Shown: piece after piece, positions 42,597-55,695 of the stretch | Layout of the letters: each line of letters begins with the position of its first letter | Position numbering within the stretch: position 1 is the first letter of the stretch | Source of the DNA: Entomortierella parvispora E1425 | Taxonomy: Eukaryota; Fungi; Mortierellomycota | DNA length: 64,000 nucleotides | Direction: 5' to 3' | Assembly (NCBI GenBank): GCA_020891255.1 | Contig: BQFW01000001.1 | Span: 2,604,001 to 2,668,000 of the forward strand | Translations under genes and position numbers: made by a program | Notes under the pieces: generated by a model | The model's database searches: none | What the model saw: only the letters and a program-made list of their open reading frames with translations | What the model was told of the DNA's origin: nothing

Positions 42597-45500
42597 ATGG
42601 AAAAAAGTCAAGGATTTCGAGTTGCCGGAGCAACAGCCGACATTGAATTCATTGCCGTCAACCGTGCCAATGAGCAAGACGTCATCTTCTGGGAAGATAT
42701 TCAGGCAGTCTTTCCTGGCGTGAAGTTTGTCCGGCGCGGTCATGTTGTACTTAGCATGTTGAGGGATTCAAACGGAATCATGTAATGTCAACTCATAAGG
42801 AGCGAGTGACCAAGATGTTTGGCCCAAAAAGACTGACAACCCTGATCTTGAACTTTCTTTAGAAATAACCCGAGGCGGATCAAGCACTTCCCTAATGAAG
42901 TTCTGGGTATTGAACTGTCTACCACAATTGACAGCACTCTGGCTACCATGGATGAGCAAATCGACATTCACTCAGCAGCTCCACATGCCACGATCCACCC
43001 CGAGTCGATCCCCATCAGCCCGCCCTCCGAGGTCTTTTCTGGCCAAAGCCAACCTGCCGCGTCTGAACCCATCGTCGTCTCCTCCGCGGCAGAACCACGA
43101 CTCACAACCTTAAGAAGATTAAACACAACAGATGTCCATAATGTATCAACCGCTATGGTGGAAGCAATTGAGCTCGCCGACAAGTCTGGGCAGCCACTTA
43201 CCAAGGAACAATTAACGACGCTCCTCAAATCCAAGTTGAATTCAGGATTGCCGATCAATTCAGCATTTGAATCCACGGTCTTTCGTAAGCTTGATACACT
43301 TCACGATCAAGGCGCTACGACACAGCAGATTGTCCTTAAGATTTTGGAGGTGCAAAAACAGATGAGCGATCGGCTGATTCTTATTCAGAACAGGACGGAA
43401 GCTATCTTGACGCAGCAATTGGAACTGGCCGAGTTTCCCATCCCTCGGCTCTTTATTGTCTTGCCAGAGAAGGTCTCCAAGTACGATGCCACAAATTGGG
43501 TCAGAACCAAATTCCGTCTGTACTTTATTTGTGAGTGCGGCGTACATACCCAAACAGAGGAAGGCAAAACCCCTCACCATCTCCACCTGGCGAGACATGA
43601 AGGATATGTGATCCGAGAGCCAACCGAGTTTTTCAAGAAGTACGGCCCCTTTCTTGTTTTGATGTTGGAGCTCATCAAGATCAGCACGAGTATCGCCAGT
43701 CATGCGGTGCCAGCGTTGGTTACCTTCAAAATTATCGAGCTGGCTGATTCTGTCCAACAGACTATGGAAACTATCACGGAAATGATCGACTACTCACTCG
43801 AGTGCATTGACAAGCAGACAGAGAAGGTTCATGCATCCTGTCTGGGAGACCTGGATGACTCTGACAACCGTCCTTCAAGAACTCAACAGGACCTCACCAA
43901 CTATCTGAAAAATGTCGAGGGTCTTGAAGGAGTCGAGTTGCGCCAGCTAGGATCATTCTTGACCGCGTCAAAGGCCGACAATCTCCTTGGGAACCTTTAT
44001 CGAATGTCAACATCGGATGGACACGTCAAATGGGTATGCCGTGATCATTATCGAGCTGGATACCAAAAGGTGCAGGTTGAAAAGCTGCGGAATATTGTCG
44101 AAAGCTCAGGTGGAAAGTTTGATGAGCAATTGGGAACGGTCGAAATGTCGTTGAAGTCCAACATTGCAGCCACTGAATTCTTTGCTGCCCTCGCTAAAGC
44201 CAAGGGGGTGATCGAACTCATTGTCGATTTCAATTGGGAGTGCGCGTGGAAGGATGTCGATGCATTACGGAAAGCAATCAAGGGATCTTCAGTTTCTACT
44301 CTCCATGTGGATCTCCAGATGTTTAAGCCGAAACCTAGCCTTCTGAGAACTCAGTTCTCCTCCTCAGTACATTCTCGGTACGCACCCTTGTCTCGACTGA
44401 TGGAACCAATTCAGCTGCGCTCGGTTCACCTCATCCTTCCAGAAGACATCATCCGACTTTCCAACTTCACCCCTACAAGACCTTCGCATCTTTATAAGTT
44501 AACTTTCAAGATGATAATCGGGCGGAATGATGATGGCAAAGTGGCCAAAGTTCTTGCAGAGGTGTCTAAATCCAACTCAATGGTGGTTTCATGTTACTGC
44601 TCAACTGAAGAGAAGGGAGCACAGGCGCTGTGGCAAGCACTGAAGACCAGCTCGACGCTAGCCGCTTTGATTCTTGATAGATTTAGGATTAGAGAAAAAG
44701 GGACGCAAGCATTGGCAGAGGCACTCAAGACCAACTCGACGTTGACCACTTTGGACATCAGTGGCAATTCGATTGGAGAGATTGGAGCACAGGCGCTGTC
44801 AGAGGCACTCAAGACCAATTCGACGCTGACCACTTTCGACATGAGTGGAAATAAGATTGGAGAATTAGGAGTACAGGCGCTGTCAGAGGCACTCAAGACC
44901 AACTCGACGCTGAACACTTTGAACCTGTGGAATAACCCGATTGGAGAGAAAGGAGCACAGGCATTGTCAGAGGCGCTCAAGATCAACTCGACGCTGACCA
45001 CTTTGAACATGAGATACAATGGGATTGGAGAGAGAGGAGCACAGGAGTTGGCAGAGGCACTCAAGACCAACTCGACGCTGACCAGTTTCAACCTGTGGAA
45101 TAATTCGATTGGAGAGAAAGGAGCAGAGGCGTTGTCAGAGGCACTTAAGACCAACTCGATGCTGACCACCTTGAACCTGCGGATGAATTCGATTGGAGAG
45201 AAAGGGGCACAGGCATTGGCAGAGGCACTTAAGATTAATTCTACGCTGACCACATTGAACCTGCGGATGAATTCGATTGGAGAGAAAGGGGCACAGGCAT
45301 TGGCAGAGGCACTGAAGCCCAACTCAATGCTGATCACTCTGGAGATGGGTAGCAATTCAATTGGAGATTTAGGAGCATGGGCTTTGTCAGAGGCGGTCAA
45401 GGCCAATTCGACTCTGGCAACTTTGGACTTGTGGAATAATTCGATTGGAGAGAAAGGAGCAGAGGCGTTGTCAGAGGCACTTAAAACCAATTCTACGCTG

Positions 45501-46304
45501 ACCATTTTGAACCTGCGGATGAATTCGATTGGAGAGAAAGGGGCACAGGCATTGGCAGAGGCACTCAAGGCTAACTCAACGCTGATCGCTTTGGAGATGG
45601 GCGGCAATTCAATTGGAGATTTAGGAACATGGGCTTTGTCAGAGGCGGTCAAGACCAATTCGACCCTGGCAACTTTGGACCTGTGGGATAATTCGATTGG
45701 AGATTTAGGAGTACAGGCGTTGTCAGAGGCACTCATGACAAATTCGACGCTGACCTCTTTGGACATGGGTGGAAATTCGATCGGAGAGGAGGGGGCATGG
45801 GCTTTATCGGAGGCACTCGAGACCAACACAAACCTGACCACTTTGAACCTGTGTAATAATTCGATTGGGGATCTAGGAGCACAGGCATTTTCAGTGGCAC
45901 TCATGACCAACTCGACGCTGACCACTTTGGACCTGCGCGGCAATTCAATTAGTGGCTTCGGAGCACAGGCGTTGTCAGAGGCACTCAGGACCAACTCGAT
46001 GCTGACCACTTTGGACATGGGTGGAAATTCGATCGGAGAGGAGGGGGCATCGGCTTTATCGGAGGCACTCGAGACCAACACAAACCTGACCACTTTGAAC
46101 CTGTGTAATAATTCGATTGGGGATCTAGGAGCACAGGCATTTTCAGTGGCACTCATGACCAACTCGACGCTGACCACTTTGGACCTGTGCGGCAATTCAA
46201 TTAGTGGCTTCGGAGCACAGGCGCTGTCAGAGGCACTCAGGACCAACTCGATGCTGACCACTTTGAACCTGCGGCTCGATCTGATCGGAGATTTAGGAGC
46301 GTAG
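42597..46304 (+). CDS. LRR receptor-like copy 4 (19 LRRs), C-terminal cap lost to a late TAG
   Basis: join(42597-42781,42863-46304) is in frame. TAG at 46302-46304 replaces the CAG of copy 1, and the ALTEACKVNSVVDV cap continues after it. Confidence 0.85.
44709..46304 (+). repeat. 19 x 84-nt LRR tandem array with 252-nt block duplications
   Basis: 45759-46010 and 46011-46262 are near-identical. Confidence 0.95.
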
Positions 46305-46610: not shown

Positions 46611-49582
46611 TTACAACTTCGCCTTCACTTCTTTAACGGTATCGTCGACCTTTCCTGCCTCGCCATCATTGCCAACAAGACCAAGTTTCGTCATGGAGTC
46701 TTCCAGTTCGTTCAAGACCGTGAAATCCTCAATGGTCGCCGGCACGATCAACTTTTGGTTCTCCAGACTCTTGCCCGCAATGATATCTCGGATCGTCCTG
46801 CGCAAGATCTTGCCTGAGCGGGTCTTGGGCAAGCGACGGATGATATACGTGTGTTGGTAATTGGCAATAGCGCCCAGGTTCTGTCGTACCATCTGCGCAG
46901 TCTCCTTCCTGATCGACTCCTCGTCCTGGGTCACACCAAATTTGAGCACCACCAGACCTACGGGGATCTGTCCCTTTAACTTGTCGGAGAGCGGGACCAC
47001 ACAGCATTCCGAGATGGCGGGATGCTCTGCCAAGATTTGTTCCACGGATCCAGTCGAGAGACGATGTCCAGCCACCTGCATGATGTCGTCCGTTCGCGAC
47101 ATGACATGGACATAGCCATCGTCATCTACAATACCCGCGTCGCCAGTGTCGTAGTAGCCAGGGAACCTGGACAGGTAACTTTTTTGAAACCCAGAGCGGT
47201 TGTTCCAGAGTGTGGTCAAGGCCGAAGGCGGCAGTGGTAGTTTGACCACAATGTTACCAAAGGTCGACGGTCCCAATTCCTTGGCCACACCACCTGTTTC
47301 CTCTGGATCAGACAGCACCCTGATATCATATCCAGGCATGGCCATGCCGGCTGCTCCTTGTCGGATGGCGATAGGGTCGATGTGGGTGCCATGAGCGTCA
47401 TAGAGTCCTTGACAGGCTCCTGTGATAGGTGATCCAGACTCTGTTGACCAGTAATTGTCCACCACGGGTTTGCCTCCAATGACATGTCTGAAGTGCGCGA
47501 TGGTGCCTGTATCCGAACGTTCGCCGGCAAGGTAAAGCCCTCTCAAGTTATGAAGGTCGTACTGAGCACTGAGCTGAGCCTCTGGATCCACTCGGCGAAT
47601 TGCGCGCAAGGCCGTAGGGGCGGTATACCAGATGCTGGCCTTGTACTCCTCAAGAACCCTGAAGAACGCCCCTGCATCTGGTGTGCCGACCGGCTTGCCT
47701 TCGTAGAGAACTGTGGAGCAACCGAGCAGCAGAGGCCCGTAGCAAATAAAACTGTGGCCCACAACCCAACCGACATCACTGGCGCAAAAGACCACATCGC
47801 CTGGTTTCGCTCCAAAGAGTGTCTTCATGGTCGCAAGTGTCTGGGTTGCATGACCGCCATTGTCCCGAACCACTCCCTATTCAAGGACAAAGAGAGAAAA
47901 AAAACAAGGTTATGAGCATCTTGCACAAAGGTCTCGGGACTTTGAACTGAGGACCCAGACCCTGAAGGGCGCTCTTTCATTTTTTTTTTTCGTAAGCGTC
48001 CATCCCTCAACGCCGCTGTCGCTCTTTCTTTTTTACCTTGGGCAAACCCGTGGTGCCGCTAGTGTACAAGATATAGAGCGGATGCTGACTTTCAACTGGT
48101 ACACACTCTTTGAATTGCTTCCCACCAAGTCGGATCCTCTGCATCTCGTCGTTCCAATCCAAATCGCCACGGGATGGGTCCAGCACGGCACGACCGGCGT
48201 CCCGCTGGAAGATAATCCTGTGAGCCGGCTTGTGGTCGCTCATGTCAATTGCCTTGTCCAACATCTCTAAAGTACAAACAAGCGGAAAGAGATGTTTTAG
48301 TCAGAATAAACGGCATTCTTAACCGAACACAATCGCCGATGGTAATGATGGTCCCAAGCAAGAGGGAGGAAGGGAGAGCAAGTTACCCTTGTAAGGAACA
48401 ATCTTGTTGACCTCGATACCGCATGAGCCGCCAATGATCAGCTTTGGCTTGCAGTCGTTGATGCGCTTTTGAATCTCCAGGGGGGCGAAACCACCAAAGA
48501 CAACCTGTTAGTCCGAAACCAAAGAACAATGATCAGCCTTCTGTGCTTTCTTTCCTGCACCAGGCAGATAGATCCTTTGCATTCCTGTCCTTGGACTCAC
48601 GCTGTGGGTGACGCCGAGACGGGCGCAGGCGAGCATCGCAACCAATGCCTCGGGGACCATGGGCACTAGAGAGAGAGACGATGGATCATGTTCCTTTTTG
48701 TTAGACTCCCAGCAGTCTGGTCATTGTTCCTTTTGCTCGGCAGCAAAGAAGCCTCTCTTCCTTACTGTAGATAAGGATCGTGTCTCCCTTCTTGGCGCCA
48801 TGGGAAGCAAGGACGCCCGCGCAGGTCTGCACCTCGTCCAGCAACTGCTGGTACGTCAGCTGTCTCTTTTCGTTGTTCAGAGGCGAGTCGTAAAAGATGG
48901 CGACCTGTTTCCCACGCCCAGATAGGACGTGACGATCGATGGCATTGTAGCAGGTGTTGAGTTCGCCGTCCTTGAACCACGTATAGCCAACGTCCCCTTG
49001 GGTGGGCAAGGAGTTGGGAGAGGGGTAATGGAGCACTTTGGAATACGGGACATGCCAATGCAATTGGGATGCATAGCCGCCCCAGTATGTCTCTGGGTCC
49101 TGGAGGGATTCCTTTTGCAAATGCACTTGGGGATGGACTTCCATGTCGAGTTGATGGGAGGCTCCGGTGGAGGATGAGGACAAGAGGGCGATGCGGGAAA
49201 GGACGGGGAGGAATGAGCGAAGGGAAGAAGGACAAGAGAAGAAAGGAGAGAGAAAAGGCTGGTGGGTTAAAGCAAGCAAAGGTGGGGGGAAGGCGTGGCT
49301 TCTGTATGGGCGACGGTGCAGTGCTCTTGCGGAGAAGGATGCTTCGGAAGAAGAACAAGAAGACGCGGTCGCGCCAGCCGGTCTTGTGGAGAAGATCGAT
49401 CCGAGAGCACTTTCCGAGTTTGTGTTTGTCGCGGGATGGTTGAACCTTTGTTGGGTGGATCGACCATGGTGCAAGAGCAGCCGTGGCGATGCAGAGGAGG
49501 AGGAGGAAAGGGATCTTACTGCCCCAGAAGAGAGAACACGTTGTTGTAGTTGCTGTTGTTGGGTGAACAAGATGTATCGCAT
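46611..49582 (-). CDS. Acyl-CoA synthetase, ACSS3/propionyl-CoA synthetase (PrpE)-like, multi-exon
   Basis: WFKDGELNTCYNAIDRH, PLYILYTSGTTGLPK, SDVGWVVGHSFICYGPLL, DNYWSTESG, YYDTGDAG and LPKTRSGKILRR; transit-peptide-like N-terminus. Confidence 0.92.
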
Positions 49583-49843
49583 TGCTGTGGAGAGGCGCTT
49601 CTCTGAGGACAGAAGGAGGTGCGTGTGCGAGTGCATAGTGTGTGTATGTGTGTGTGTGATCAAGACAAGAAGAAGAACAGGATATGAAGATGAAGAATGC
49701 AGAGAACAAGAACAAGAACAAGAACTAGAACAAAAAAAACGCGTCCACGCCCTTTGCGATCGATCTCGTGCGTGGCTTTGCTGCGTGTCCCTTTATTCGC
49801 TGTGTGCCCGCCTGGCCTGGTGGTGTCTTTACTCTGCACATGC

Positions 49844-51681: not shown

Positions 51682-53856
51682 TTAAGAGCTAGCAGCATAG
51701 AAGCACCATGGGCCTGCGGTACCGCTGGGGAGAGGGCTCCAACAGCAGGTCGTGGACTGGCACTCGGCCTGGGTGATGCCGACATAGCCGCAGTCCGTGC
51801 GGTTGGCGACAGCAACGTTGCAAGAGTCGGTGATGGGAGGTGTGGGAGTACCAGCAAGAGTAGACAGAGCGGTATCGCGGGCAAACTTGGCCGTGATCAA
51901 GGCGGCGTAGGACCAGGTCAAGTGGTGGGCTCCCTGGCGGACACCGCTGACGGGGTTGAATTGTTCAGTCATCATCTGGTCCGATCCCATCCAGTACGAG
52001 AGAGTGTCCAAGTAAGCATCTGCCTCGCCAAAGAGGTTGTTGACAAGGGTGTTCAAGTCAGAGCCAGAGATGGTGCCGCCCACAGAGGCAGAGACACCAA
52101 AGTACTCGTAAACTTGCTGGTTGTTGGATGTGACCGAGGCGGATCCGGCCGTGAAGAGAGAGGTGGCGGCATCATAGTAGAACTCGGCCATACCTGCGGT
52201 TGCCAGCAACCAAGCTCCGGCGCCATTGTTGTTCACACCATCTGTTTGGAAATAGAGAGAAAGAGACAGAGAAGTTGACTTTGTCAGTTATCGAATAAAG
52301 AACAGACAAGGACAAAAGGCTATTCATCGTGATTAACTTACCATCACCGTTGTAGACATCCTCCATGTAACGACCGACCGTAGGAGCGTAGGCAGAACGC
52401 TGCTGGTTAATGGCAAATTGACCCTTGAAGAAACGGGCATAGCGCCAGACAGTGAGCATGACCTGATCGTTCGTGGGTGAGTTGTAGTTGTCAGTATCGA
52501 ACGAATGGATTGAGCCCAACAAGATGGCGGCATCAGGGCTCTTTCGGCCACTAATGTTCATCATTTGATTAATGTAGCCGGCGGTGGAGTTCCAATGGTC
52601 GGCCATCATGCCCTCGAGGGCCGACGCCGTGTTCTCGTAGCTGCTGACCAAGCTCGAGTTGGACACCCACGAGCTGAAGTAATCCTTGCCCGCAATGAGA
52701 CCACGGCGCTGCACAATCTCGGTGTACCAGTGCTGGGCCGACTTTTCCTCCCAGAGATCAAAGCAGGTGGTACCAGTGATGCAGGCGTTGGCGTAGTTGC
52801 GAACAATGTAGTCGAGATCTCTTTGGAGCTGCGAGCTGAGGCTGGTCGCGTAGGCGGTATCACCGGTAGCGGCGACATAGGCATCCAAGAAACGCTTGAT
52901 GGCGCGCACACGGAGACCGGGGCCATCGTTCTGAGGGCGGCCCCAGGATCCGGTAAAGGCCGAACCGTCCACGTTGAACTTTGGTTCTCCGACATTGTCG
53001 AGGATGTTGCCAGTAATGTTGACCGTGGGGTTGGTTCGGGAAGCGAGACCGGCCTCAAAAGTGATCCAGGCCTGCAGCTTGGACAAGTAGAGGTCGGCGT
53101 TGGTAGTATCACCCGAGGCGATGGCGTTGGCATACAACCTCGCAATGGTATCCATTGTCAGGGAACTGTCGCGGGCCCAATGGTACCAGTAGTCGGGGTT
53201 CTACAAAAGAAGAAAGAGAAATGGCAAAACTGCTTTGATAAGAGGGAGCCGTACTTGCGATTGGGTACATTTGTGCAGAAAGGGAAGAAAAAAATAGCTT
53301 CGTGATCGTGTTTCTGGCACCACTGGCATGCGTGCACGAGCCTAATGAAAGGTTGAGAGCATCAAATACAGTAGTGCAAAAAGCTTACGCTGGTCGACTG
53401 GGCGGCCACAACGGCACCCGCAACGGCGCCTGGAGGGGCGAGAGCATTCAGCAATTGAGTAACGGAGTACGAGTACTGGTTGTTCAACCAAGTGGCGATC
53501 GTGTTGCGGTCGGGGGCTGCGGGACGGGTAGAGTTGGAGGGAGAGGTGTAGTAGCACCAAGCACCGCCGTCATAGACTGGAGTCCAGCAGCAGCTGGAGG
53601 CAGTACAAGTTGACTCGGTGGAGCCAATGCTTCCACAATCCAGGCGACTGTCGCTAGCTAGAAGATTGAAGTGAGGAGATACAGACAACCTGGTGGGTTA
53701 GCTCTTGGTTGCGAGCAGCCATTGAAGGCGAAACACTTGCAAATGGCTCCTGAATGTTGGCGACGTACGGAGATCACTGCAGGTAGCGCGCTCGAAGAGA
53801 ATAGGGGAAGCTTGGGCCAGGACAATGGCCGCAGAGATCAAGAGGAAGGAGCGCAT
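51682..53856 (-). CDS. Secreted GH15 glucoamylase with N- and C-terminal P-type trefoil domains, multi-exon
   Basis: Signal peptide MRSFLLISAAIVLAQA; GH15 motifs NPDYWYHWARDS, GEPKFNVDG, WGRPQNDGP, FDLWEE, TEQF and LTWSYAA; two six-Cys trefoil-type domains. Confidence 0.92.
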
Positions 53857-55695
53857 GACGGATTGGGAGGATCAATTGAGAGGAATCGAAGATCAGGGGT
53901 GAAGGGAGGTGAGGATTGCAGGCGAGAGAGACTTTGGAGGTGAGGAGCCGAAAAAAGAAGAAAAAAAAAGAAAGGAGGATGGTCTTTCGTTCTTTTTATA
54001 CTTGAGATTTTCGTTTCTAGCAATGAGCTATGTCGCCAAAGTGGGCAGATTGCGTCTAGGGATGGGATGCAGTTAGCGAAATGCATGTAGACAAGCAACA
54101 ACATGCGGAATCAAGATAACGAACCCTCTGGGCCCATGTTCTCTCTGTCTGTTGACAAAAGTCTGCGAAAACCTCCCCCCCACAAAACCAGTCGAGGTGC
54201 GACCGCTTGAAAATGGGGCCAGACGAACATTGGTTGCTCCCCACAGTCGCACAAGAATATGGAAAGCTGCAAGCGACAATCTGAAGTCCGTCAGGGGGAA
54301 AAGGGCCAAAGGGAGCTATTGCCTTTTGTCTGTTCGGCAGTATGCCCATAGATGGATGCAGCTCATGGGAATTCAGAGCTAAATAGTCATCTCGCACCTC
54401 TCGACAACTTGTCTTCATAGAAGCGCATGTGAAGAATGTACTCCAAGAGTGTGGAGGAACTTGCTCTTTCTCCGCTCTACCTCTCGTGTCCAGCCCCGAC
54501 AAAGAGTCTTTTCAATCAGGGTCGGTGGAGACGTATATCCCTTGCTTCGTACAACGGAAGCCACGGGCAAGTTTTCAAAGGCAGTGACGTAAAAAAGAGT
54601 ACATACAACCACCAGAAAGATAAGAGCGAAGCAAGAGAAGAAGGGAAAGATATCATGGGAAGATACCATGAGAGCAACAAACAACAAAAAAAGCGCAAGG
54701 ATTCGCGCCCACGGAGCATGCGCTTTAGCCAATCGAATCCGCCCCGGACCTGACCCTGAACCATGGCTGCAGGGCCGTTTTTAGTGTGTCCCTATCAACC
54801 CCACAAATCCCGATCGAACAGGCTCTGCTTCCCTTTGCGCCTTTCGTTTTCTTTTGCACGGGTCATGAAAACCTGCCTAAACGGGCCAGGTGATCTTATC
54901 GTTCAACCACGGCAAAATGAGCCGACCGCTTCTCTTGACAGAGGTGGAAATGGGCCTCTTCTGGCCTGCTCTAATTATCCGCTCCCTATTCTCTCAGTTC
55001 GCTTTCCAGCTCCCTAGTTCCATAGGACCACCTCCCGGATTCACGGTTCTCAGAACTGTGTCCAGGAATCCGCTTCTATCATCCTTTCATCGTCCATGTT
55101 GCTCTCCTGTTCCTTTGGTTCCTGATTGATCTTGCCCTCAATTGCTCTCTTCTCTCGTTCCCGAGCGCTACACCTGCCCAATGTGCCTGCACTTATCACA
55201 TATCCAGTGATAAGTTCCTGCCCCATGGCCCATTCGCCTTACTCGCCTTATTCTTCCACTTTGCTTGCTTCTGACTCATCATTTTTTTTTTGGGGGGGGG
55301 GGGTACCCACATCATGGTTCGAGTCGACCCAAGTAGTATCTTGAGTGAAACGCCACGTCCTTTCAGGCTGCGAACGCCCGCAGTGGCTGTGTGACTCTCA
55401 TTTCGAGATTGATCCGAAACCTGGTTGTTTGTTGGTACTTGATTCTCCGACCTAGCAAACATCGCCAAACACGACCGCGCAGAACCCCATTGACCCTGTT
55501 CAGTGGCGTCTCACCCGGTGCCCCTGACTGCCCCTGGTACCTGAGTTTACCTGGGACCCAGAGCTTATTAGGGTCCATCCTCGGTAGCTCGTTCAAAAAT
55601 AAATATAAATACCTTGACCAAGTTTGTGCAAAAAGAGATCATCACTCAACCTCCACACCTTCTTCTACACTCACCCACTTCCACAACTTTTCATC

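What the first reader, a model, noticed from the sequence alone, without database searches (positions are those of the whole stretch)
51682..53856. Glucoamylase bracketed by two trefoil (P-type) domains
Seen after splicing out intron 53658-53768: the N-terminal domain is TCSDLPSDSRLDCGSIGSTESTCTASSCCWTPVYDGGAWCYY (53548-53781). The C-terminal domain is SCNVAVANRTDCGYVGITQAECQSTTCCWSPLPSGTAGPWCFY (51697-51822). Both fit the trefoil signature as I recall it (R-x2-C-x-[FYPSTV]-x3-T-x3-C-x4-C-C-W) and attach by Pro/Thr linkers to a GH15 core with both catalytic Glu motifs. Established: fungal glucoamylases normally carry CBM20 or CBM21, while trefoil domains are known from animal TFF lectins and GH31 alpha-glucosidases. 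Inference: trefoils act here as an unrecognised carbohydrate-binding module.
Basis: partly seen in the sequence, partly recalled or inferred. Interest (0 to 1): 0.75.

Follow-up and report, generated by a model that had tools for sequence, protein, structure and literature searches.

The report
Fungal glucoamylase flanked by trefoil lectin domains
A soil fungus (Entomortierella parvispora) makes a secreted starch/glycogen-trimming enzyme that carries, in place of the usual starch-binding module, one small "trefoil" sugar-binding domain at each end; this design is real, old and shared by other early-branching fungi, sits unremarked in public databases, and I found no paper that describes or tests it.

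Summary
A four-exon gene on the minus strand (51682-53856) encodes a 591-aa secreted GH15 glucoamylase. It has a Pfam Trefoil (PF00088) domain at each end, both above the curated cut-off. All four exons are 100% identical to GenBank GJJ68419.1 (glucoamylase, Entomortierella parvispora), so the splicing is independently annotated.

The design is not a one-off. Orthologues in Mortierellaceae, two Mucorales and a chytrid form one well-supported GH15 clade. That clade is separate from the CBM21 glucoamylases of Mucorales. Other chytrids, metagenomic proteins and a diplonemid carry one to four trefoils on GH15.

In this genome trefoils occur only on this enzyme and on a GH31 alpha-glucosidase. No CBM20 was found, and CBM21 lies elsewhere.

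All 21 GH15-linked trefoils keep the acidic residue and the Trp that bind sugar in human TFF3 and in the trefoil of human acid alpha-glucosidase.

Best reading: the trefoils are lectin modules that hold non-reducing alpha-glucan ends for the exo-acting enzyme. Binding was not tested.

The link to GH15 and to fungi was not found in the literature searched. Moderate interest; a new variant of a known kind.

The parts
51682..53856 (-). Whole coding region of the glucoamylase gene (4 exons, 591 aa), ATG at 53856, stop TAA at 51684-51682
   Evidence: All exons are 100% identical to GJJ68419.1 / P0001.
53769..53856 (-). Exon 1: Met, a signal-peptide-like hydrophobic N-terminus (residues 1 to about 16, cleavage probably after A-Q-A) and Cys1 (C26) of the N-terminal trefoil; ends in phase 1
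   Evidence: The signal peptide is inferred by inspection only; no predictor was available. AF2 gives a low-confidence helix at residues 4-16.
53658..53768 (-). Intron 1 (111 nt, GT..AG), splits the N-terminal trefoil between Cys1 and Cys2
   Evidence: The junction is confirmed by P0001 residues 29-31.
53548..53781 (-). N-terminal trefoil (P-type) domain, residues C26-Y66, intron 1 included; putative ligand residues D36 (53640-53638) and W63 (53559-53557)
   Evidence: Pfam 36.7-39.3 bits against a cut-off of 21. PDB sequence hits to TFF2 and TFF1. Cys spacing.
53389..53657 (-). Exon 2: rest of the N-terminal trefoil, a short Ser/Thr/Pro linker (about residues 67-79) and the start of the GH15 domain
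53201..53388 (-). Intron 2 (188 nt, GT..AG)
   Evidence: The junction S119|N120 is confirmed.
51889..53442 (-). GH15 catalytic (alpha/alpha)6 domain, Pfam residues 102-523, introns 2 and 3 included; general acid E270 at 52750-52748 in the LWEE motif, general base E498 at 51966-51964 in the TEQF motif
   Evidence: Pfam 231.8 bits on P0001. Catalytic residues are invariant. PDB sequence hits to fungal glucoamylases at E 8e-33. Foldseek TM 0.80-0.83 to 1GAI, 1AYX and 3EQA.
52342..53200 (-). Exon 3 (286 codons plus 1 nt)
52242..52341 (-). Intron 3 (100 nt, GT..AG)
   Evidence: The junction D405-D406-G407 is confirmed.
51682..52241 (-). Exon 4: C-terminal part of GH15, the Thr/Pro linker (about residues 536-545), the C-terminal trefoil and the stop codon
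51697..51822 (-). C-terminal trefoil (P-type) domain, residues C546-Y587; putative ligand residues D555 (51795-51793) and W584 (51708-51706), with P583 before the Trp
   Evidence: Pfam 49-53.5 bits. PDB sequence hits to TFF2 at 7e-12, TFF1, TFF3 and human GAA. The AF2 model has pLDDT 85.6. All 27 Foldseek hits are trefoil domains; the best is TFF3 with ligand, 6V1C, TM 0.84, rmsd 1.6 A.

Best explanation
The gene encodes a secreted, catalytically competent GH15 glucoamylase (glucan 1,4-alpha-glucosidase) of Entomortierella parvispora. Its accessory modules are two trefoil (P-type) lectin domains, one at each end on short linkers, in place of a CBM20 or CBM21 starch-binding domain. Shown here: the architecture, its identity with the public annotation, intact catalytic residues, the trefoil fold, conservation of the arrangement across early-diverging fungi, and retention of the Asp/Trp pair. 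Inferred: each trefoil offers one shallow cleft in which the conserved Asp (D36, D555) hydrogen-bonds O4 and O6 of a terminal alpha-linked glucose and the conserved Trp (W63, W584) stacks on the next sugar. [quoted passage not shown] Two such end-binding sites on one enzyme would give avidity for substrates with many chain ends, such as glycogen, amylopectin and branched dextrins. They would also keep the exo-acting active site close to the non-reducing ends that it attacks. This differs from CBM20 and CBM21, which lie along the alpha-1,4 helix. My odds: architecture real about 0.97; trefoils bind carbohydrate about 0.7; the ligand is an alpha-glucan end about 0.55.
For: The core is a fungal glucoamylase by sequence and by fold, and its catalytic residues are invariant. 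The C-terminal trefoil model superposes on the ligand-bound TFF3 structure and on the GAA trefoil. D555, P583 and W584 align with GAA D91, P125 and W126 (ranges). Those GAA residues contact acarvosine 25 A from the active site (PMC5653652). In TFF3 only Asp20 and Trp47 side chains touch the ligand, and D20A and W47A abolish binding (PMC7221086). Across 21 GH15-linked trefoils the acidic residue is kept in 21 of 21 (19 D, 2 E) and the Trp in 21 of 21. The own genome has only three trefoils: two here and one on a GH31 alpha-glucosidase. It has no CBM20, and CBM21 is not on GH15. The two other GH15-like loci are phosphorylase kinase subunits, so this is the only glucoamylase. The arrangement is conserved: the T-GH15-T(T) clade has SH-aLRT 100 across Mortierellaceae, Mucorales and a chytrid. 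N-type trefoils are 59% identical to each other, C-type 66%, and N against C only 44%. Trefoils also occur on other GH15 lineages and, among the hits, with GH71 and CBM26.
Against: No binding or activity data exist for any of these proteins. In the same chytrid group trefoils are also fused to glyoxal oxidase, and many hits are stand-alone multi-trefoil proteins. The module is therefore not restricted to alpha-glucan enzymes. The N-terminal trefoil of Mortierellaceae has Ala where GAA has the stacking Pro125. The authors of PMC5653652 note that the GAA site may need proteolytic removal of a loop, and that no ligand is seen at this site in MGAM or SI structures. Trefoil pLDDT in the full-length model is only 63-76, and inter-domain geometry could not be read. 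An end-binding module could in principle compete with the active site for chain ends.
Confidence: 0.6

Rival explanations
1. The trefoils are lectin modules for a glycan that is not the substrate, for example the fungus's own wall or mucilage, or alpha-GlcNAc- or alpha-Gal-terminated glycoconjugates of prey, hosts or other microbes. They would anchor or target the enzyme rather than feed it substrate.
For: Chytrid trefoils are also fused to glyoxal oxidase and occur as stand-alone multi-trefoil secreted proteins. The best structural match is the mucin-binding TFF3. The Asp/Trp pair reads only O4 and O6 of a terminal alpha-linked hexose and tolerates Glc or GlcNAc (PMC7221086).
Against: Within this genome trefoils occur only on the two alpha-glucan exo-hydrolases. 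Among the hits, the identifiable enzyme partners are mostly alpha-glucan active: GH15, GH31, GH71 and CBM26. That search was seeded with a GH15 fragment, so GH15 is over-counted.
Confidence: 0.2
2. The trefoils are structural rather than sugar-binding. As compact, disulfide-rich, protease-resistant caps they would stabilise the secreted enzyme, aid folding or secretion, or mediate oligomerisation.
For: The linkers are short (about 10-13 residues), so the domains may pack on the core. The literature cited in PMC13111337 ascribes stability and folding roles to the N-terminal region of GH31.
Against: A purely structural role does not explain strict retention of the exposed ligand pair Asp/Glu plus Trp in 21 of 21 domains across phyla. 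It also does not explain copy numbers from 1 to 4 at either end, which is typical of binding modules.
Confidence: 0.12
3. The architecture is an artefact: a wrong gene model, a fusion of neighbouring genes, or chance Cys-rich matches.
For: The N-terminal trefoil depends on splicing out intron 1, and no RNA data were available here.
Against: The independent GenBank model is identical in all four exons. All splice sites are canonical and in frame. Orthologues in at least seven genera show the same arrangement. Pfam E-values are 4e-9 and 2e-14, and the fold is confirmed.
Confidence: 0.02

Closest known systems
Fungal GH15 glucoamylases with starch-binding modules (Aspergillus niger GA with C-terminal CBM20; Rhizopus oryzae GA with N-terminal CBM21)
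   Same: Same catalytic family, fold and catalytic residues. Secreted, with a catalytic domain joined to small binding modules by Ser/Thr/Pro linkers.
   Different: No CBM20 or CBM21. Instead there are two roughly 40-aa disulfide-knotted trefoil domains, one at each end. The linkers are much shorter than the 36-aa R. oryzae linker (PMC1933424 abstract). The catalytic domain belongs to a separate clade, about 33-36% identical to the CBM21 enzymes. The predicted binding is to chain ends rather than along the helix (inference).
[quoted passage not shown]
   Same: A trefoil domain is attached to an exo-acting alpha-glucan hydrolase. The GAA trefoil binds the non-reducing end of acarbose through D91, P125 and W126, residues that are kept here. 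The same genome has the GH31 version too.
   Different: The catalytic family and fold differ: GH15 (alpha/alpha)6 against GH31 (beta/alpha)8. There are trefoils at both termini rather than only at the N-terminus. The fungal domains have CCW where the TFFs have CCF.
Mammalian trefoil factor peptides TFF1-3
   Same: Same Pfam family, Cys spacing and fold (TM 0.76-0.84, rmsd 1.5-1.6 A). Same ligand-contacting Asp/Asn and Trp. Divalency is needed for function in the TFFs and is also present here (PMC7221086).
   Different: TFFs are free peptides that cross-link mucins through GlcNAc-alpha-1,4-Gal. Here the domains are modules of an enzyme, and the ligand is unknown.

Membership tests
Glycoside hydrolase family 15 (glucoamylase) | Match to the family profile above the curated threshold | tested here: met
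   PF00723 scores 142.8 and 59.3 bits on exons 3 and 4 and 231.8 bits on the identical public protein; the cut-off is 22.
Glycoside hydrolase family 15 (glucoamylase) | (alpha/alpha)6-barrel catalytic fold | tested here: met
   The AF2 core has pLDDT above 90. Foldseek gives TM 0.80-0.83 (target-normalised) to 1GAI, 1AYX, 6FRV and 3EQA.
Glycoside hydrolase family 15 (glucoamylase) | General acid Glu in the WEE motif and general base Glu, plus Arg-Asp and Trp of subsite -1 (A. niger numbering Glu179, Glu400, Arg54/Asp55, Trp120; from established knowledge) | tested here: met
   W269, E270, E271, E498, R129 and W205 are invariant, and D130 nearly invariant, in the 39-sequence alignment. The DLWEE motif is aligned to 1AYX.
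Glycoside hydrolase family 15 (glucoamylase) | Inverting exo-hydrolysis of alpha-1,4 (and alpha-1,6) bonds from non-reducing ends | not testable with these tools
   This needs an enzyme assay.
Trefoil (P-type) domain, PF00088 | Match to the family profile above the curated threshold, with no better match to another Cys-rich family | tested here: met
   The N-terminal domain scores 36.7-39.3 bits and the C-terminal 49.3-53.5 bits, against a cut-off of 21. No other family matched at E<=1.
Trefoil (P-type) domain, PF00088 | Six Cys with spacing C-x9/10-C-x9-C-x4-C-C-x9-12-C | tested here: met
   One search shows C26/37/47/52/53/64 and C546/556/566/571/572/585. The six Cys columns are at least 90% conserved in 108 trefoil proteins.
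Trefoil (P-type) domain, PF00088 | Three-loop fold with a short helix and a two-stranded sheet, and 1-5, 2-4, 3-6 disulfides | tested here: inconclusive
   The fold is met for the C-terminal domain: pLDDT 85.6, and all 27 Foldseek hits are trefoil domains, best TM 0.84. The N-terminal domain was seen only at pLDDT 63-76 in the full model, with the matching helix and strand pattern. Disulfide pairing could not be read because no coordinates were returned.
Trefoil (P-type) domain, PF00088 | Ligand-contacting Asp/Asn before Cys2 and Trp before Cys6 (TFF3 Asp20/Trp47; GAA D91/W126) | tested here: met
   D36/W63 and D555/W584 in this protein; 21 of 21 in GH15-linked trefoils.
Trefoil (P-type) domain, PF00088 | Lectin activity | not testable with these tools
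   This needs ITC, a pull-down or a glycan array.
CBM20 / CBM21 starch-binding modules | Profile match within the protein | tested here: not met
   No CBM family matched in any exon at E<=1. The genome has no PF00686 hit, and the PF03370 hits are on contigs C4 and C8 only.
CAZy carbohydrate-binding module (any numbered family) | The trefoil domain is listed as a CBM family on the basis of demonstrated binding | not testable with these tools
   CAZy was not available. To my knowledge the trefoil domain has no CBM number, but this was not checked here.

The most novel reading that the evidence does not exclude
The trefoil domain is an ancient eukaryotic binding module that recognises the ends of alpha-glucan chains (a 'type C' module). 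It would have been the original accessory domain of both GH31 and GH15 amylolytic enzymes in the ancestor of fungi and animals. It would then have been kept in Chytridiomycota, Mortierellomycota, some Mucorales and Glomeromycota (and found on GH15 in a diplonemid), and replaced by CBM20 or CBM21 in other lineages. If binding were shown, it would found a new CBM family with a recognition mode unlike the known starch-binding domains.
Probability: 0.3. Interest if true: 0.6.

Novelty: new variant of a known kind. Interest (0 to 1): 0.42.

Why it matters
Glucoamylases are among the most used industrial enzymes, and what is known of how they hold starch rests on CBM20 and CBM21. This is a third, unrelated and very small (about 40 aa) module, placed at both ends of the enzyme and conserved across early-diverging fungi. 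It would be a new way to target an exo-amylase, probably to chain ends rather than to helices. It offers a simple microbial system for testing the proposal that trefoil domains of alpha-glucan enzymes, including human GAA, MGAM and SI, are genuine substrate-binding sites. It also shows that the trefoil domain, usually discussed as an animal mucosal peptide motif, is widespread in fungi. The claim is modest. The parts are known families, the gene is already annotated with both domains in public databases, and nothing has been measured.

Tried and rejected
1. Other Cys-rich families: a Pfam scan at E<=1 found only Trefoil in both segments.

2. CBM20 and CBM21: absent from the protein. The genome has no CBM20, and CBM21 only at C4 and C8. 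Those two loci were not examined further.

3. Other glucoamylases in the genome: the two further PF00723 loci (C7, C3) are homologues of phosphorylase b kinase alpha/beta subunits, not glucoamylases.

4. Gene cluster: the neighbours are an LRR protein and an acetyl-CoA-synthetase-like gene, with no functional link.

5. Literature: six searches combining trefoil, TFF or PF00088 with glucoamylase, GH15, Mortierella, chytrid or fungi found no description of the architecture. The only near hit is a passing remark that 'trefoil factors' are predicted in fungal proteomes (bioRxiv 10.1101/2021.04.01.438069). PMC12874731 was checked and is unrelated.

6. Single origin of all trefoil-GH15 fusions: not supported. 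The tree needs at least two changes on starred branches. That was a quick search with long branches for P0031 and the Powellomyces group, so their placement is unsure.

7. Foldseek E-values for the 50-aa model are weak (at best 2.7e-3) because the domain is tiny. I rely on TM-score, rmsd and the fact that every hit is a trefoil domain.

8. Inter-domain geometry (distance of the trefoil clefts from the active site) could not be obtained, because the structure tool returns no coordinates or PAE.

Exons were searched one by one by reference, and the full-length searches, tree and fold used the public protein P0001 that a search returned and that is identical to the four exons.

Full report
**What is in the sequence**

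Read on the minus strand, window 51682-53856 holds a four-exon gene. The exons are 53856-53769, 53657-53389, 53200-52342 and 52241-51682. The three introns are short and GT..AG.

A search with exon 4 returned a public 591-aa protein, P0001 = GenBank GJJ68419.1 / UniProt A0A9P3H1Q3, 'glucoamylase [Entomortierella parvispora]'. It is 100% identical to each of the four exon translations, at residues 1-29, 31-119, 120-405 and 407-591. Residues 30 and 406 are the two split codons. So the splice model is independently annotated, and the organism is a Mortierellomycota soil fungus. All full-length steps below used P0001 by its id.

**Domains**

Pfam finds Trefoil (PF00088) in exon 2 at 36.7-39.3 bits and at the C-terminus at 49-53.5 bits, against a cut-off of 21. 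It finds GH15 (PF00723) in exons 3 and 4. Nothing else matches at E<=1.

- Cys spacing is the classical trefoil one in both domains.
- Both domains hit TFF2, TFF1 and TFF3 in the PDB by sequence. The C-terminal one also hits the trefoil of human acid alpha-glucosidase.
- An AF2 model of the C-terminal domain (pLDDT 85.6) matches only trefoil domains in the PDB. The best is ligand-bound TFF3 (6V1C; TM 0.84, rmsd 1.6 A). Human GAA gives TM 0.70-0.77.
- The core is a fungal glucoamylase by sequence (E 8e-33 to 1AYX) and by fold (TM 0.80-0.83).
- The catalytic residues W269-E270-E271, E498, R129 and W205 are invariant, and D130 nearly so, in 39 GH15 sequences.
- The N-terminus looks like a signal peptide. 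This is by inspection only.

**Context in the genome**

A six-frame scan of the 38.9-Mb genome finds only three trefoils. Two are in this gene. The third follows a signal peptide in front of a GH31 alpha-glucosidase on contig C11. That is the arrangement known from animal GAA, MGAM and SI.

No CBM20 was found, and CBM21 occurs only at two unrelated loci. The two other GH15-like loci are homologues of phosphorylase b kinase alpha/beta subunits. This is therefore the genome's only glucoamylase. The window neighbours (an LRR protein and an acetyl-CoA-synthetase-like gene) are unrelated.

**Relatives**

The word search with P0001 lists proteins annotated with both PF00088 and PF00723 from several genera, and pattern matching gives their layouts. 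T stands for one trefoil domain.

| Organism | Group | Layout |
|---|---|---|
| Entomortierella, Podila | Mortierellaceae | T-GH15-T |
| Linnemannia | Mortierellaceae | T-GH15-T-T |
| Gongronella, Hesseltinella | Mucorales | T-GH15-T-T |
| Blyttiomyces | chytrid | T-GH15 (partial record) |

On a tree of 45 GH15 proteins these form one clade with SH-aLRT 100, together with a Gryganskiella model that lacks a trefoil. The clade is separate from the Mucorales CBM21 glucoamylases. The next-best hits fall to about 36% identity.

Within the clade, N-terminal trefoils are 59% identical to each other and C-terminal ones 66%, while N against C is only 44%. The two positions are therefore old, distinct and inherited together.

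Trefoils also sit on other GH15 lineages:

- Powellomyces: GH15-T-T, two paralogues.
- Gorgonomyces: GH15-T.
- Metagenomic proteins: T-T-GH15.
- The diplonemid Namystynia: a protein with four trefoils and GH15.

Starred branches force at least two changes of the trait. That was a quick tree with some long branches.

Of 108 trefoil-bearing cluster representatives among the hits, 12 carry GH15, 2 GH31, and one each GH71, CBM26 and glyoxal oxidase. The GH15 count is inflated, because the query contained a GH15 segment.

**How it probably works**

Two papers give the mechanism for trefoil domains.

- In TFF3, only Asp20 and Trp47 side chains contact the ligand. Asp20 makes a bidentate bond to O4 and O6 of the non-reducing alpha-linked sugar, and Trp47 stacks on the next sugar. 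D20A and W47A abolish binding. TFF1 and TFF2 have Asn at this position. The authors propose that the trefoils of amylose-processing enzymes bind maltose or isomaltose (PMC7221086).
- In human GAA, the acarvosine end of a second acarbose sits in the trefoil, 25 A from the active site and on the same face. It is held by D91, P125 and W126, and the authors suggest it helps the enzyme adhere to glycogen (PMC5653652).

From the aligned ranges, D91, P125 and W126 correspond to D555, P583 and W584 here. The N-terminal domain has D36 and W63, with Ala in place of the Pro. In 21 of 21 GH15-linked trefoils the acidic residue (19 D, 2 E) and the Trp are kept.

From this I infer that each trefoil binds a terminal alpha-glucosyl residue. 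Two of them would give avidity for substrates rich in chain ends and would hold the exo-enzyme at the ends it cleaves. This would be a different logic from CBM20 and CBM21. It is inference; nothing was measured.

**Rivals**

- The trefoils bind a non-substrate glycan and anchor the enzyme (0.2).
- The trefoils are structural caps (0.12).
- The architecture is an artefact (0.02).

**Against what is known**

The catalytic domain is a member of GH15, and the end domains are members of the trefoil family. Every sequence-level defining feature of both families that could be tested was met. The fold test was met for the GH15 core and the C-terminal trefoil, and left open for the N-terminal one.

Six literature searches found no description of a trefoil on GH15 or any functional work on fungal trefoils. 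One survey notes in passing that 'trefoil factors' are predicted in fungal proteomes. The combination is, however, already visible in public databases.

**Verdict**

This is a new variant of a known kind, of moderate interest.

Noticed in passing
L012:280-3801 (G000:C11:355679-359200, + strand; outside the window): The genome's only other trefoil domain follows a signal peptide in a first exon upstream of a GH31 alpha-glucosidase (Gal_mutarotas_2, GH31 TIM barrel and C-terminal domain). This is the animal GAA/MGAM/SI-type arrangement in a fungus. Here the residue before Cys2 is Glu rather than Asp.
   Followed up: partly
L013 (G000:C7:2472000-2479000) and L014 (G000:C3:415600-422700): Two paralogous long genes with GH15-like domains are homologues of phosphorylase b kinase regulatory subunits alpha/beta (E 2e-59 and 2e-53 to PDB 8JFK). 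They are not glucoamylases.
   Followed up: partly
P0005 (Geranomyces variabilis), P0032 (Namystynia karyoxenos), P0137 (Scutellospora calospora), P0009 cluster (Piromyces sp. E2): Trefoil domains are mobile modules outside animals. Examples: five trefoils with glyoxal oxidase in a chytrid; four trefoils with GH15 in a diplonemid; two trefoils with GH31 in a glomeromycete; GH31 with trefoils in an anaerobic gut fungus. Single hits with GH71 and with CBM26 were not identified by organism.
   Followed up: partly
G000:C4:2022116-2022433 and G000:C8:1491946-1492257: The only two CBM21 domains of the genome lie in open frames of 610 and 818 aa, far from any GH15. They may be glycogen-targeting phosphatase subunits, but this was not examined.
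   Followed up: no
window 42948-46304 (+) and 46611-49660 (-): Neighbours of the glucoamylase gene: a 1118-aa leucine-rich-repeat protein, and an acetyl-CoA-synthetase-like gene (ACAS_N, AMP-binding) split by at least one intron. Several ORFs of 200-620 aa at 55.6-60.9 kb on the minus strand have no Pfam match.
   Followed up: partly
window 53857-54005 (-): Upstream of the ATG there is a long T- and CT-rich tract, and a TATAAAA at about 54000-53994, roughly 140 nt before the start codon. This looks like a promoter and 5' UTR but was not analysed.
   Followed up: no
P0181 (Gryganskiella cystojenkinii) versus P0003 (Dissophora ornata): Both begin with nearly the same signal peptide, but only the Dissophora fragment continues into a trefoil. 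The Gryganskiella model may have skipped a trefoil exon. Some Mortierellaceae may therefore have a second paralogue of the trefoil glucoamylase.
   Followed up: no
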